Assembly: GCA_024626585.2 (NCBI GenBank) | Contig: JANKJI020000002.1 | Span: 243,292,053-243,310,712 of the forward strand | From: Ginkgo biloba | Taxonomy: Eukaryota; Plantae; Ginkgophyta | Direction: 5' to 3' | DNA: 18,660 bases | Shown here: one piece after another, positions 12,787 to 18,660 of the stretch | Layout of the letters: each line of letters starts with the position of its first letter | How positions within the stretch are numbered: position 1 is the first letter of the stretch | Translations under genes and position numbers: made by a program | Notes under the pieces: generated by a model | Database searches by the model: none | What the model was told of the DNA's origin: nothing | Seen by the model: only the letters and a program-made list of their open reading frames with translations

Positions 12787-13279
12787 ATAACTTAGGAATA
12801 TAGTTACATCATAAATAAATCCATAATTAAATTAGATAAAGGAAAAGAAGCTCTCTATTACAAAGTGTAATAAAGAGTACAATATCAAAAATCTCAACTA
12901 TTAAGAGTTATAAGAATACAATCCTATGGCTATTTTATAGAAAGGTCATGGCTAAACATAGTGATAAGATCTAAAAAGAAATATTTTCATGCACACTCCT
13001 ACTAGCACGTGCCAACCATACAATAGAAATAAGTAATATAAGTCAGGCATATATGAGAATAAAAGCATGATAATGCACACACACTGCCTATAATTAACAA
13101 TAGCTAACTAGAGTGAGAGAGGGAAAGAAAACTACTATTAATTGAAAAAACATATAAGGAAAATCTCTCTAAATATATTCCCCATGGTCATAGCTCCTCA
13201 AGAAAGATAGACCCCATAGAACCAAGTTCCATCTCTCCCCTGGTTGATGGTACATCACTTCCTCCTTCCTAAGGAAGCA
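12787..13279 (-). mobile_element. Ty3/gypsy 3' end: PPT and start of the 3' LTR
   Basis: Minus strand reads ...ttaggaaggaggaagtga|TGTACC: a polypurine tract followed by the LTR TG starting at 13254. The frame ends FLRKEEVM, typical of pol C-termini. Confidence 0.55.
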
Positions 13280-13379: not shown

Positions 13380-14817
13380 AAATGCTGTCTATTGCAGAAG
13401 ACCTTCGCTGGAAAGAGATAGAGCAATTCTATAGCCACTCAAAGTGAAAATGTACAACAAAAAAAAATGAAGAGCAACTAGGATTTTTGTTTACTTCCAT
13501 TGTTCACTGTATGTTGGATAAGAGGAAGAGAGTTGTAGAGGTAATTGTCGTTTGCCACAGTTTTAGGAGTGTACAATTTTATGCATGGGTTTGGTCATTT
13601 TAACATTTGGTGATAACCTTTAAGGAGAGCTTCATATATTTTTATCTATTCTAGTAGATCATATGGGGAATGAGATAACATGACTTATTGCAGTGAAGCA
13701 TTACCAAAGAGGAAAAGGAAGGAAATACATTTAGCACAGGGAGTATGGAAATACTAGAAGGAGTCAGTTGATGCATTTTAATCTATATTACCTCTTACTA
13801 TTGACCTTCATAATGTTACAATGTGGACTAGGCATTGGGAACAATTGAAGGACCAAGTGAGTTAGAAATTTGATCCATATTCTCAAGATTTCACACTTGC
13901 AAAAGGTTGCAAAGTTAGAGAAGATTTAGGAGTCATTAGATGATTCCCTTGAACAATAACATCAATAATTTCCTCATTTCTATTTCTTATCGAGTGATAA
14001 CCTACTTGATATTCTTGGCCAAGACAAGGATCCACAAAATGTGCAACCTTATTTGAAGAAGAACTTTGAAGACATCAAAATATTGGAGCTACATTCACTA
14101 GGTGAAGAAGTTTGTCTAAACTATGAGACGACAGGAATTCATTCACTGAATGGAGAATACTTACCATTTACAATGCATGTTATATTAGACACACCTCTAG
14201 AGGAATGGTTAAACAGGGTGGAGGAATCCATGCATTCTACAGTGAAATTTAATCTTGTGAAGGTGTGAAATAGATGGAAGGATTTCAAGAAAAAGGTGGA
14301 GGATGCCATGGAAAGTGCATTACGAAACACCGTTAGTAGATCTTTGCAAGAGTTTTTCAACTCTTTGAATGTAGATGGTAAATGACCTACACTAGTGTTT
14401 AATACTATTGTCGTGCTTCATAAAGGACATTGAACAAGTTTAATTAATACCATCGACCTAGGAATTATCGAAGGTTGTTCAAGTGGGTTTTAGGGAGCTT
14501 ATAACGGTCATATCTATTGTTCCTCATTTGAGAGAACAAACACAAGAAGTTGGGGTCGTGAGTATTTTAGAAAAAGTCCAATAGCTCCTCTAGTATTGGG
14601 AAAAGAAGTATAAAAGTGTTTGGGGTCAAGGTAAAGATGCTTATATTCGAAGATATGAGAAGTCCAAGGAACCACTATTAGCATTTGAGATTGATACCTC
14701 CAATTATGAAGACGTGCAAGATGATATACGTGCTGAGGATTCTATTTCAAATCTTTGCTTTCTAAGATTAGATTACGGGCTCTCAAGCATTCCATTATTG
14801 TAGATTGTGAATGCTAG
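13380..14817 (+). pseudogene. DNAH2: Rearranged pseudogene of an axonemal inner-arm dynein heavy chain (DNAH2/DHC10, I1-beta-like), tail and linker (DHC_N2) region only
   Basis: 13740-13903 reads GVWKY*KESVDAF*SILPLTIDLHNVTMWTRHWEQLKDQVS*KFDPYSQDFTL (PLIxDLxNxxxRxRHW motif). 13912-14265 reads KLEKI*ESLDDSLEQ*HQ*FPHFYFLSSDNLLDILGQDKDPQNVQPYLKKNFE...NGEYLPF...LEEWLNRVEESM (FPRFYFLS and ExWLxxVExxM motifs). 14263-14817 reads V*NRWKDFKKKVEDAMESALRNTVSRSLQEF...EKVQ*LL*YWEKKYKSVWGQGKDAYIRRYEK...FLRLDYG..LKHSIIVDCEC*, which matches the DNAH2/DHC10 tail as I recall it. 13380-13740 gives weaker tail matches (PLK, KRKRVVE, IWGM). Many stops and frameshifts. Confidence 0.88.
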
Positions 14818-15455
14818 TGACACTCCATCCTTTCTTGTGTCGAGAAAATTGGATCTTAGGTTTGTGTTGCATTCGGTGCAAAACTTGGAGTACGAGAAAA
14901 GAGTTTGATCAGTTTCGGAAGCGATCTCTCATGGATTATGATTATCCACATTGTGTTGGAGCAACATTGTGGGCTTTGCAGAGTCGAAGAAATAATGACT
15001 CTCCTCTCAAATGTAATACCATGTCTACTAGTAAGACCAACAACTTTTGAATCTTCAACACAATATAGTTAGACTCTGGTCTCAATTGAATTGTTTAACG
15101 TTGTGTCAACAAGATTTGCTCGAATAAACACACTCTCGTTACTTTTATGCGATAGGTTGATGAACCTGAGCCTTGCTCTTCACAACCTACTCACGATGAT
15201 TTGGATTGGAAGAAACAAGACATGGTGATTTGGAACAAATGACACACGCCGATTTAGAATAGTGAAATTTAGTCAAGGAGAAAAAATTGAATAATTTTTA
15301 AATTATAACTTAGATTTTGATAAAATTATTTCGTTAGCACTATCGAGTTATCCCTTGAATCAAGCTTAAGTGACCGTATTGTTGAATTGTTTTAGGGTTT
15401 TTTAGAGCTTAGGCTTAGTTATATTGTATAAAGTTTGTAAGGGCCCCTTTGTGTT

Positions 15456-15551
15456 CAAAATGCCACCAAGAAAATAAACTTGATGTTCCAAAATGGCACC
15501 AAGAAAATAAACTTGATGTCTCAAAATGCCACCAAGCAATATAATTGGTGT
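15456..15551. repeat. Tandem repeat, 33-bp unit, about 3 copies
   Basis: caaaatgccaccaagaaaataaacttgatgttc / caaaatggcaccaagaaaataaacttgatgtct / caaaatgccaccaagcaatataattggtgt. Confidence 0.9.
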
Positions 15552-15559
15552 CAAATGTT

Positions 15560-15720
15560 CAAATGTGGATGAAATGTATAACTTTATGTTAAAAGACCAA
15601 GGATGAATCTACTTTAGTATTGCTTCGATGACAAAGCAATTCAAGAAGGGAGGAAATGTTATGACCCTAATTACCATTACTTAGAAGATAATTAGTTCTA
15701 TCGGCTTGACTAGTATTAAT
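15560..15720 (+). mobile_element. Chromovirus 3' end fragment (PPT and LTR start)
   Basis: gatgacaaagcaattcaagaagggaggaaa|TGTTATGACCC: an LEDK...QEGG-like pol end, a PPT, then TG at about 15657. Confidence 0.5.
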
Positions 15721-15729
15721 TATTGATTA

Positions 15730-16660
15730 GTGATAATTTAGTAGTTAAGAATGATTAAACAAAAAGTCACATGATGAGAGGTGCCTTCTCATAAGCACCC
15801 TTTGACTTTTTATAACCTATCTATAGGCCATTCAACCTACATTGCAATATGATGGTGAACTAGTTTAATTTCTCTATATAGGCTTCAACACTTTGGCCAA
15901 ATTTTTGTCTAATGTATTATCACTGGATTTGTTGTTCCCTCCTATATTTAGTTGGGTAGAATTTCTTTTTAATCACTAGCTTAAACTCATCCCATATTGA
16001 AATGGGTAGTCTACCCTACTGGTTCTCTATCACATAAACTCTCCCATGAAAGTGAGGCTTGACCTCACATTTTGAGCTTAGCAAAGGCAATGTTTTAAGG
16101 GTCCGTATATTGTTGCATTGCATAATAAGTCTCTTGTGCTTAGTTAGTCATCAAGCTTTTCAACATCCATCTTCCCATTATATGTTGGGATTTCCATATT
16201 GATCAACCTTAGAAGTGGTGTTTAATGTCTACATTAGGAGATTAGATCTCAAAAAAGTTATAATAATTCTATTACTTGAAGAAGCATTACTTATAACACT
16301 ACTCCTAATTATTGTAGTCATTACTACATATGTGGAAGGGGAAGTGACTAGGCTTTACATGATTTAAAAAGGTTGCAATATTCTATAATCAAGGTCCATT
16401 TAGAGATGGTATAGGCTTCTCTTTAGATGATCAACTCTTTCACCTCCATCTTAATCTATAATTCTTTCAAGCCATTATCTTTGACAGAACTAACATATTA
16501 TTTGACTAAGCTTCATTCTTGATCTGATTGATGTTGTATAGTTCTTTAATAACTCTATAATAGGGAATGCACTAGTTGTTATCCTTCTTCTTATTTCTAA
16601 TTAGTCCAAACTAATAAATAAATAAATTCATGCCTAAGTATCTCTAAGCCCGAGGATCTA
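15730..16660 (-). mobile_element. Degenerate Ty3/gypsy gag
   Basis: MEIPTYNGKMDVEKLDD* at about 16145-16198 (IPxFxGxxDxExxxDW gag motif). Boundaries approximate. Confidence 0.7.
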
Positions 16661-16740
16661 CTTTCAAAATATACTTGATATTTTGATTTTCTTATTCTTA
16701 GTTTTATAAAATTATGCTACTATATTAAAATATTATCTAA

Positions 16741-16868
16741 AACCCTAGATGTATATAATGCAAGTAAAATTAAAATGAACACAAATCATATTCACAAATT
16801 ATAGTCATATAAAAAAGATGATTTTTTATTAAATATAGGAAATAAAATGCTCTATAGATCTTATAATG
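16741..16868 (+). repeat. Dispersed repeat of about 125 bp, copy 2 (probable LTR fragment)
   Basis: Diverged direct copy of 11045-11171. Confidence 0.75.
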
Positions 16869-18660
16869 TTTTGACCCAAGTCACCACTAAAAATATTTAA
16901 AAGGATTTCCTATCAAAAGGGGAGAGAATATTGTGAAGAAAGCACAACAAACCCATATGGATATAAAAAGGAGACCCTCTCCTTATAAAATAGTATTTAT
17001 GTATAAATTTTAAAATTTTTAGATATTTATTTTAGCATAATGATAAATTAAACATTGAGAACTTTCCGGTGATATCTTGTTTTTAAAAAATAGAGTTCGG
17101 ATGNNNNNNNNNNNNNNNNNNNNNNNNNNNNNNNNNNNNNNNNNNNNNNNNNNNNNNNNNNNNNNNNNNNNNNNNNNNNNNNNNNNNNNNNNNNNNNNNN
17201 NNNATTGATCTGTCTAAGCATTACAATAGGATCTAGAAGTAGGCCAACCTCCTACACATTCGAGTGTGTTAGACCTAGTGAATTTGGAAGATGAAGTGAA
17301 GGGAATAAATAAGATTTTTTGTTAGTTGGTGGTGCATGGAGGTCGACTTATAAGACCAAGACATGCCATGCTAAGTATCCTTCAAAGGTGCTCCTTTTAT
17401 CAAGGAGGAGAAACCTCTACATTTATTTTAGAATCGTGCTAGCCTCCAACTGATTCAATCCAAAATTAAATCTCTTATCTCCTTTCATTAGTGTCAATTA
17501 TTAGATTGGAATATGGTGTAATTAGGGGAAATGTATGCTTTAGATCAGGAATTTTATAAAGCTTNNNNNNNNNNNNNNNNNNNNNNNNNNNNNNNNNNNN
17601 NNNNNNNNNNNNNNNNNNNNNNNNNNNNNNNNNNNNNNNNNNNNNNNNNNNNNNNNNNNNNNNNNGTTATTGATAATTTGCTTTTGTAGATCTATTCAAT
17701 TATAGTTGCAGACAAGAATCGAGGCTCAAGCCTTGGACGTAGACTTTCTCAAAGGCATGGTGAATGCCATTTGCCATAATAACAGTTCTAGATAGAATGA
17801 AACAAGCACCCTAAGATTGGGGCTAATGATGGAATGAACTAGAACTTTTAGTAGTGTTGTCAAGTATGCTTGCAAGAGAAAAATCACCTTGTATATGAGA
17901 GCTCTCAACATTTTGGGAGCGAAATTACAATCTAAACTTCATCAACATGATTTAAAGGTGGAATCATTGGTGGTTGGCAATACCATCCCTCTAACACTAT
18001 CTCAATTGGCATGGATAAACTCCCACCAAGCGGTTTATATAATAGAGGAAGAGTAACTAAATTGATGATAAGTGGTGATAGAGAATGCAATCTTGCCAAA
18101 CTCTTCTACATGTTGATTATTGTGACAAACCATTATATGCAAGATGTAAGGTTGGCCTTCCATGCTATAATTTTGTAAGGCAACTGGTTTTATATTTTTT
18201 GAAGATCCTCCTTAAATTTTTCTAAACAAAACTTAATTTATTTTTAGCCAATACATAGACTCACTTTAAACAACTACCAAAAAAAACTAAAAGGGAAAAG
18301 AGAACAAAAAGAAAAAAGAAAAGAAAAAGGTTGTTCAAAATAAATGGAAACAATGTTCCTCCAAAGGTAGGTTAAAACCTTTAAATTCTCACGATTGTCA
18401 CTAAGAAAAGATACGGGAGGCGGAATAGGTTCTAATTCTTTTTTCATGTCTTGGGAGTGACTTTATTGGCCAACAAATGTTTTTTTTCACAATATTATGG
18501 ATCGACAAAGAAATTATTGTATTCTAATCGATGGATCACAAGAATTAATTAAAAAATTAACGTGAAAGTGAGGTCCAACTCACGCCAAGCATTTGACCCA
18601 AAAATAGAGTTTTAAACTAACGTAAAGTTTTCGGACAGAGCAAATAGTACTTAATTATCA

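What the first reader, a model, noticed from the sequence alone, without database searches (positions are those of the whole stretch)
13380..14817. Circularly permuted dynein pseudogene: candidate circRNA-derived (back-splice) retrocopy or reintegrated DNA circle
Seen: in one gap-free stretch, late-tail and linker dynein segments (13380-14262, ending EEWLNRVEESMHSTVKFNLVK) continue in frame at ...GTG AAG|GTG TGA AAT AGA TGG... (14262/14263) into V*NRWKDF...KDAYIRRY...CEC*. Recalled knowledge: in DNAH2/DHC10 this second block lies several hundred residues N-terminal to the linker, and its end (HCxxW) lies only a few tens of residues before the segment where the copy starts at the gap edge. The order is therefore middle, end, start: one almost complete turn of a circle. 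The junction matches the exon-junction consensus AAG|G and the long blocks have no obvious introns. Inference: a back-spliced circular RNA was reverse transcribed and inserted. Such pseudogenes are described in mammals (e.g. circRFWD2-derived copies in mouse); I know of no plant case. Alternatives are eccDNA reinsertion, or tandem duplication followed by deletion. A possible donor GAG|GTAATT at 13540/13541 with about 40 unassigned bases could be an intron relic, which would favour a DNA origin.
Basis: partly seen in the sequence, partly recalled or inferred. Interest (0 to 1): 0.85.

Follow-up and report, generated by a model that had tools for sequence, protein, structure and literature searches.

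The report
Scrambled dead copy of dynein gene
This is a dead, intron-free copy of part of a sperm-flagellum dynein motor gene whose pieces sit in scrambled order; the scrambling is real, but it looks like copying errors during reverse transcription, not the trace of a circular RNA.

Summary
The out-of-order join at 14262/14263 is real. On land-plant DHC10 (inner-arm I1-beta, DNAH2-type) numbering, linker residues about 1582-1706 are followed directly by tail residues about 850-1078. Contigs from two other sequencing studies span the join.

The "one turn of a circle" reading fails on four counts:
- 13380-13739 has no detectable dynein similarity.
- About 190 residues are missing inside the first part.
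The block ranks along the window are 3,4,2,1, which is not a rotation of 1,2,3,4.
- No join side falls on an intron position known from Marchantia or inferred from a fern. At two joins the residues fit both sides.

The copy is continuous across seven Marchantia intron sites and one fern-inferred site. It carries at least 10 stop codons and 4 frameshifts. It is therefore a processed pseudogene.

Best reading: the scrambling came from several template switches during reverse transcription, or from later rearrangement. A circular-RNA origin is not excluded but has no positive support. The organism is coded and is probably Ginkgo, which still has the parent gene. The scan noted this same stretch once before (s1-603377), not on other DNA. 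Interest is low to moderate.

The parts
13380..13739 (+). Stretch inside the finding with no detectable dynein similarity. It could be flanking DNA, a retained intron remnant, or sequence decayed beyond recognition. It ends in an acceptor-like CACAG just before block 1.
   Evidence: z below 2.2, PDB search blank, frameshift-aware scores equal to shuffled DNA.
13740..13911 (+). Block 1: start of the DHC_N2 linker region (RHW motif). It matches Diphasiastrum DHC10 from residue 1330, Marchantia 1372 to about 1430. It has 3 in-frame stops (13755, 13779, 13863).
   Evidence: tblastn E=5e-16, 57% identity (the full hit, Diphasiastrum 1330-1392, runs to 13928); Pfam DHC_N2 weak hit.
13904..13914 (+). 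Join J1: a skip of about 190 residues, from Marchantia 1427-1430 to 1598. The residues A-K/E-L fit both sides, and the reading frame shifts by +1.
   Evidence: Contigs X4 record 18 and X10 record 1 span it.
13909..14262 (+). Block C: end of DHC_N2. It matches Diphasiastrum 1582-1706 (that hit starts at 13891), Marchantia 1598-1715; 13969-14265 matches Chlamydomonas 1-beta 1577-1674. It has 3 stops (13927, 13957, 13966). It is continuous across Marchantia intron sites 1643 (14046|14047) and 1700.
   Evidence: Adiantum E=1e-41, 68% identity.
14260..14268 (+). There is no filler. The V codon at 14263-14265 fits both sides. The TGA at 14266-14268 aligns with an Arg codon of orthologs and reads TGG in some individuals (A>G at 14268).
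   Evidence: Spanning contigs X10 record 2 and X4 record 19, and the variant table.
14263..14817 (+). Block B: tail and coiled-coil region. It matches Diphasiastrum 850 to about 1078, Marchantia 858-1121, Chlamydomonas 860-1070+. It has an in-frame internal loss of about 25-45 residues at about 14545-14552, frameshifts near 14423-14435 and at 14780, and at least 5 stops. It is continuous across intron sites 923, 1065.67 and 1092 and the fern-inferred site 867/868.
   Evidence: E=1e-36 to 1e-41.
14815..14823 (+). Join J4: a second backward jump, from Marchantia about 1121 (the W of HCEAW, now TAG) to about 541. At most 3 nt of filler.
   Evidence: Contig X4 record 21 (14327-15526, 3 differences) spans it.
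14821..15159 (+). Block A: DHC_N1 tail segment with the P..GA.LWA motif. It matches Diphasiastrum 535-650, Marchantia about 541-656. It has 2 frameshifts (14893, 14991) and 2 stops. It is continuous across intron sites 553 and 635.
   Evidence: Core 14895-15008 E=1e-8 in Adiantum, Marsilea and Diphasiastrum. Shuffle test z=15, 0 of 2000. Frameshift-aware score 178.

Best explanation
Window 13740-15159 is a dead, processed (intron-free) partial copy of the mRNA of the axonemal inner-arm I1/f beta dynein heavy chain (DHC10, DNAH2-type).

It consists of four same-strand pieces in the order 1330-1392, 1582-1706, 850-1078, 535-650 (Diphasiastrum numbering).

Most likely the reverse transcriptase, or a repair polymerase, switched template several times at short matching stretches while copying this mRNA. 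It skipped forward twice, losing about 190 and about 25-45 residues, and jumped back twice. The product was inserted and then decayed by C-to-T type changes and small indels. It has no function.

Shown: homology, order, strand, absence of introns, stops and frameshifts, and presence in independent samples.
Inferred: that the scrambling happened during reverse transcription and not later, and which enzyme did it.
For: - Class: best PDB matches are Chlamydomonas 1-beta and human DNAH2. Land-plant DHC10 gives 42-68% identity over the long block alignments.
- Order and strand.
- Processed: the copy is continuous across Marchantia intron sites 553, 635, 923, 1065.67, 1092, 1643 and 1700 and a fern-inferred site at 867/868. 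The orthologous genes span 238-345 kb in Diphasiastrum and Adiantum, so they are intron-rich. Site 1700 is shared with an algal contig, L001.
- Joins: they are sharp, with 0-3 nt of filler. None lies on a known intron site. At J1 and J2 the residues fit both flanks.
- Dead: at least 10 stops and 4 frameshifts. One RNA run laid (about 2% of it read) put no read on the copy.
- Real: 10 studies hold the stretch, and contigs span every join at single-copy depth.
Against: - No poly(A) tract and no target-site duplication at either end, so no retroelement can be named.
- The microhomology is read at the amino-acid level from orthologs, not from the parent's own nucleotides.
- Three block ends lie within 2-5 codons of Marchantia intron sites: block 1 start, J1 left and J4 left. 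This is more than expected by chance and is unexplained.
- Later DNA rearrangement of a once-collinear retrocopy would look the same.
Confidence: 0.55

Rival explanations
1. A once-collinear DHC10 retrocopy, or a short tandem array of it, was scrambled later at the DNA level. Possible routes are duplications followed by deletions, replication template switching (MMBIR/FoSTeS), or excision and reinsertion as an extrachromosomal circle.
For: The features are the same as in the best explanation: sharp joins, residues that fit both flanks, all pieces on one strand, and no introns. Missing poly(A) and target-site duplication fit later loss of the ends.
Against: It needs at least two duplications or transpositions plus at least three deletions within 1.4 kb. 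No duplicated dynein segment remains in the window. Depth is single copy.
Confidence: 0.25
2. A back-spliced circular DHC10 RNA was reverse transcribed, going round the circle more than twice with skips that removed the back-splice junction each time.
For: The order is non-collinear on one strand, there are no introns, and there is no poly(A), as described for circRNA-derived pseudogenes (PMC4897178). On a circle all jumps become forward skips. Some chlorophyte DHC10 fragments (P0121, P0094) end an exon at the residues where block C ends.
Against: The rank order 3,4,2,1 is not a rotation. No join is an exon end fused to an exon start by Marchantia or fern positions, and the acceptor side of 14262/14263 is 10 and 104 codons from the nearest sites. 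The model needs three large skips that together lose at least 60% of the template. The supposed closing segment at 13380-13739 is not dynein.
Confidence: 0.07
3. This is the decayed native DHC10 locus, or genomic gene fragments captured by a DNA transposon (Pack-MULE or Helitron type), not an RNA-derived copy.
For: Block 1 begins within 2-3 codons of an intron site and is preceded by an acceptor-like CACAG. Repeats flank the region from about 15270 onward.
Against: Eight intron sites are cleanly absent. No terminal inverted repeats or long direct repeats bracket the region. No motor-domain remnants occur anywhere in the window.
Confidence: 0.05
4. The scrambled order is an assembly artefact of a gappy draft.
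For: The window has an N gap roughly every 2 kb.
Against: There is no N inside 13380-17103. Unitigs from runs of different studies span all the joins with 0-3 differences. Sixteen runs hold half or more of the sampled words, and ten studies hold at least part of the stretch.
Confidence: 0.02

Closest known systems
Processed pseudogenes and chimeric retrocopies made by reverse-transcriptase template switching (from my own knowledge: L1-mediated chimeric retrotranscripts in mammals; chimeric retrogenes in rice)
   Same: Intron-free copy of an mRNA, sharp joins without filler, possible microhomology, and neutral decay afterwards.
   Different: All pieces here come from one mRNA and two of the jumps go backwards on the same strand. 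There is no poly(A), no target-site duplication and no identifiable retroelement nearby.
circRNA-derived pseudogenes (Dong et al. 2016, PMC4897178; circRFWD2 copies in mouse)
   Same: Non-collinear order on one strand, no introns and no poly(A) tail.
   Different: The defining exon-end to exon-start back-splice junction is not seen. The block order is not cyclic. The copy is single, not a family.
Axonemal inner-arm I1/f beta dynein heavy chain (Chlamydomonas DHC10 / 1-beta, PDB 8glv chain Co; human DNAH2, 8j07)
   Same: The DHC_N1, coiled-coil and DHC_N2 segments align at E=1e-17 to 1e-26. Ferns and lycophytes give 42-68% identity over the long block alignments.
   Different: Only about 470 of about 4500 residues are represented. 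They are scrambled and carry stops and frameshifts. There is no AAA+ motor.

Membership tests
Dynein heavy chain, DHC10 / DNAH2 class (as source gene) | DHC_N2 linker domain signature | tested here: met
   Pfam PF08393 E=1e-26, 94 bits against a cut-off of 31.9.
Dynein heavy chain, DHC10 / DNAH2 class (as source gene) | Class-specific tail is most similar to I1-beta/DNAH2 and not to other DHC classes | tested here: met
   The tail piece 14594-14800 hits only 1-beta (E=2e-17) and DNAH2 among PDB dyneins. Land-plant DHC10 gives E=1e-36 to 1e-41.
Dynein heavy chain, DHC10 / DNAH2 class (as functional gene) | Open reading frame with six AAA+ modules | tested here: not met
   No motor-domain hit anywhere in the window. 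At least 10 stops and 4 frameshifts.
Processed pseudogene (retrocopy) | Introns of the source gene absent | tested here: met
   Continuous across 7 Marchantia intron sites and 1 fern-inferred site. The parent gene of this genome was not available.
Processed pseudogene (retrocopy) | 3' poly(A) tract and target-site duplication | tested here: not met
   No shared k-mer longer than 7 nt at the ends. The only A-run (13459-13467) lies outside the copy.
Processed pseudogene (retrocopy) | Intron-bearing parent gene elsewhere in the same genome | tested here: inconclusive
   Contigs about 91% alike at 14047-14110 and 14327-14423 exist in the same runs, but their sequence could not be read.
circRNA-derived pseudogene (PMC4897178) | Non-collinear junction that joins the last base of a downstream exon to the first base of an upstream exon | tested here: not met
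   Marchantia residue 1715 is joined to residue 858. The nearest intron sites are 1700 and 1738.67 on one side and 754 and the fern-inferred 867/868 on the other. This was tested on relatives, not on the parent gene.
circRNA-derived pseudogene (PMC4897178) | Segments keep the cyclic order of the circle's exons | tested here: not met
   The rank order along the window is 3,4,2,1.
Template-switch (chimeric) retrocopy | Sharp joins with microhomology between donor and acceptor sites | tested here: inconclusive
   There is no filler, and residues at J1 and J2 fit both flanks. A nucleotide-level test needs the parent sequence.

The most novel reading that the evidence does not exclude
The mosaic was copied from a circular DHC10 RNA by rolling-circle reverse transcription with several skips. 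That would make it the first circRNA-derived pseudogene reported in a plant.
Probability: 0.06. Interest if true: 0.6.

Novelty: new member of a known kind. Interest (0 to 1): 0.25.

Why it matters
The finding matters mostly as a correction. A striking "first plant circRNA-derived pseudogene" reduces to an old, scrambled processed pseudogene.

It has modest value in three ways:
- It shows that the sperm-flagellum dynein DHC10 mRNA was retrocopied in a large-genome plant, probably Ginkgo.
- It is a clean example of several same-strand template jumps within one mRNA.
- It is a reminder that a non-collinear pseudogene is not evidence for a circular RNA unless the join sits exactly on exon ends.

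It does not bear on the loss of dyneins in seed plants if the host still makes motile sperm.

Tried and rejected
- Distant full-length DHCs from the representative search mapped the blocks only weakly. Block A was borderline (HMM E=0.5; no PDB or Pfam hit) until land-plant orthologs were found.
- A 90%-cluster search with the 99-residue piece found no candidate. Length limits apply, so this says nothing about a parent gene.
- The NB-ARC ORF search for a taxon hint gave one hit, Ginkgo Gb_22424 at 48% identity. This is weak because full-length NLRs were outside the length limits.
- The fern and lycophyte DHC10 loci were too long to fetch (345 kb and 238 kb), and Selaginella was not on record. 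Intron positions therefore come from Marchantia (L004) plus a gap in the Adiantum gene model.
- A search for LTRs, TIRs and target-site duplications around the copy found only a 125-nt dispersed repeat (11047-11171 and 16743-16867, 82% identity) and nothing bracketing the copy.
- One Pfam call failed on wrong ORF coordinates and was corrected.

Full report
**1. What is there**

The stretch 13380-17103 contains no N. Translating its three forward frames gives stop-free pieces.

- Piece 13969-14265 (99 codons) is a DHC_N2 match (Pfam E=1e-26). It aligns end to end with residues 1577-1674 of the Chlamydomonas inner-arm I1 1-beta heavy chain (8glv_Co, E=6e-26). Human DNAH2 is the next best hit.
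- Directly after it, 14269-14382 matches 1-beta 860-896.
- 14594-14800 matches 1-beta 1006-1070 (E=2e-17), and among PDB dyneins it hits only DNAH2 otherwise.

So the source gene is DHC10/DNAH2-class, and the order really is non-collinear at 14262/14263.

**2. Better references**

A full-library search gave distant full-length dyneins. These confirmed the order but were only 24-48% identical to the copy.

A region search with one of them returned named land-plant DHC10 proteins: Adiantum P0190, Marsilea P0193, Diphasiastrum P0207, Selaginella P0220 and Marchantia P0224.

Against these the window shows four blocks, all on the + strand. Numbering is Diphasiastrum.

| Block | Window | Residues | Support |
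|---|---|---|---|
| 1 | 13740-13928 | 1330-1392 | E=5e-16 |
| C | 13891/13909-14265 | 1582-1706 | E=1e-39; Adiantum 68% identity, E=1e-41 |
| B | 14257-14817 | 850 to about 1078 | E=1e-40; internal loss of about 25-45 residues near 14545 |
| A | 14821-15159 | 535-650 | core E=1e-8; frameshift-aware score 178, 49 of 110 identical |

Block A had first appeared only weakly. A shuffle test at the homologous site of eight references gave z=15, with 0 of 2000 shuffles reaching the observed score.

**3. What is not there**

It has no dynein similarity in any of these tests:
- distant references;
- the PDB;
- land-plant references;
- a frameshift-aware alignment to residues 1100-1375, where scores equal those of shuffled DNA.

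The same holds for 15160-15700 and 12787-13279. No motor-domain remnant occurs anywhere in the window.

**4. Consequence for the circle**

Ranked along the protein, the blocks appear in the window in the order 3,4,2,1. The rotations of 1,2,3,4 are 1234, 2341, 3412 and 4123, so the observed order is not a circular permutation.

There are also two internal losses:
- about 190 residues at about 13905;
- about 25-45 residues at about 14545.

About 250 residues are absent between the end of block B and the start of block 1. The copy therefore holds about 470 residues out of a span of about 1170.

**5. Is it processed?**

I fetched the Marchantia DHC10 locus (L004) and placed its introns exactly, using GT-AG ends and a translation equal to the protein.

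The pseudogene reads straight through sites 553, 635, 923, 1065.67, 1092, 1643 and 1700.

A 114-residue hole in the Adiantum gene model starts exactly at site 754 and ends before KVE. This points to a further fern intron at 867/868, which the pseudogene also crosses.

Site 1700 is shared with an algal contig, L001, so it is old. The orthologs span 345 kb in Adiantum and 238 kb in Diphasiastrum, so these genes are intron-rich.

The copy is therefore derived from spliced RNA. This is inferred from relatives; the parent gene of this genome was not available.

**6. Are the joins splice junctions?**

In Marchantia numbering the joins are as follows:

| Join | Links | Distance to nearest intron sites |
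|---|---|---|
| J1 | 1427-1430 to 1598 | left side 1-4 codons after site 1426; right side 23 codons after 1575 and 45 before 1643 |
| J2 (14262/14263) | 1715 to 858 | left side 15 codons after 1700 and 23 before 1738.67; right side 104 after 754 and 10 before the fern-inferred 867/868 |
| J4 | about 1121 to about 541 | left side 4-5 codons before 1125.67; right side 12 codons before 553 |

None coincides with an intron site.

At J1 the residues A-K/E-L, and at J2 the residues L/M-V-K/E-V, fit both the departing and the arriving sequence. This looks like microhomology.

The defining feature of circRNA-derived pseudogenes is a reversed exon-end to exon-start junction (PMC4897178). That feature is not met here.

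Two points keep the idea alive at a low level:
- Some chlorophyte fragments end an exon where block C ends.
- Three block ends lie within 2-5 codons of Marchantia sites.

**7. Reality and copy number**

Ten studies of one coded organism hold at least part of the stretch, and 16 runs hold half or more of its sampled words.

Laid contigs span every join:

| Join | Spanning contigs |
|---|---|
| J1 | X4 record 18, X10 record 1 |
| J2 | X10 record 2 (0 differences), X4 record 19 |
| J3 and J4 | X4 record 21 |

- Depth is 6-22, which is single copy.
- Two short patches (14047-14110 and 14327-14423) also attract contigs about 91% alike. These probably come from the parent gene's exons or from a sister copy.
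- One RNA run (about 2% of it read) put no read on the copy.

**8. State of decay and ends**

There are at least 10 in-frame stops and 4 frameshifts. Several stops sit where orthologs have R, Q or W, which fits C-to-T type decay. No poly(A) tract and no target-site duplication is present. No LTR or TIR pair brackets the copy.

**9. Host**

The organism is coded. Three things point to Ginkgo biloba:
- Contig totals are about 8 Gb per run.
- Studies run from 2016 onward.
- The neighbouring NB-ARC ORF's only hit is Ginkgo Gb_22424.

This is an inference, not a result. Ginkgo keeps DHC10 and motile sperm (PMC9237703). The copy is therefore an ordinary by-product of an active gene, not a fossil of a lost organelle.

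**10. Verdict**

This is a scrambled, processed DHC10 pseudogene. The best mechanism is repeated template switching during reverse transcription (confidence 0.55). Later DNA rearrangement comes next (0.25). A circular-RNA template is a long shot (0.06-0.07).

Noticed in passing
window 8916-9902 (-): A 328-codon ORF with an NB-ARC domain (Pfam E=2e-20). Its only hit in the 90%-cluster search is Ginkgo Gb_22424 at 48% identity. I used it only as a hint to the taxon.
   Followed up: partly
window 14268: An A>G variant appears in contigs of two other studies. It turns the TGA stop just after the join into TGG, so the pseudogene is polymorphic.
   Followed up: no
window 14047-14110 and 14327-14423: Extra contigs about 91% alike (X10 record 3; X2 record 10 and X4 record 22, 1028 nt) map here only. 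They are probably exons of the live DHC10 gene or of a sister copy. The first patch starts exactly at the position of Marchantia intron site 1643.
   Followed up: partly
window 15585-15689, 15795-15899, 16110-16214: Very high-copy repeats, with summed contig depth of 10^3 to 10^4 against about 8-20 for the pseudogene. They have many variant joins and are presumably transposon fragments downstream of the copy.
   Followed up: no
window 15455-15540: Three tandem copies of a 33-nt unit.
   Followed up: no
window 11047-11171 and 16743-16867: A 125-nt direct repeat at 82% identity lies on either side of the pseudogene region. It is too short to call an LTR pair and is probably a dispersed repeat.
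   Followed up: partly
P0190 (Adiantum capillus-veneris DHC10 model): The annotated protein lacks 114 residues (Marsilea 789-902). The hole starts exactly at a conserved intron site, so one or more exons were probably missed in that public annotation.
   Followed up: partly
window 13729-13739: An acceptor-like TTTAGCACAG lies immediately before the first dynein codon of block 1. That codon is 2-3 codons from Marchantia intron site 1369.67. This could be a retained intron end or a coincidence.
   Followed up: no
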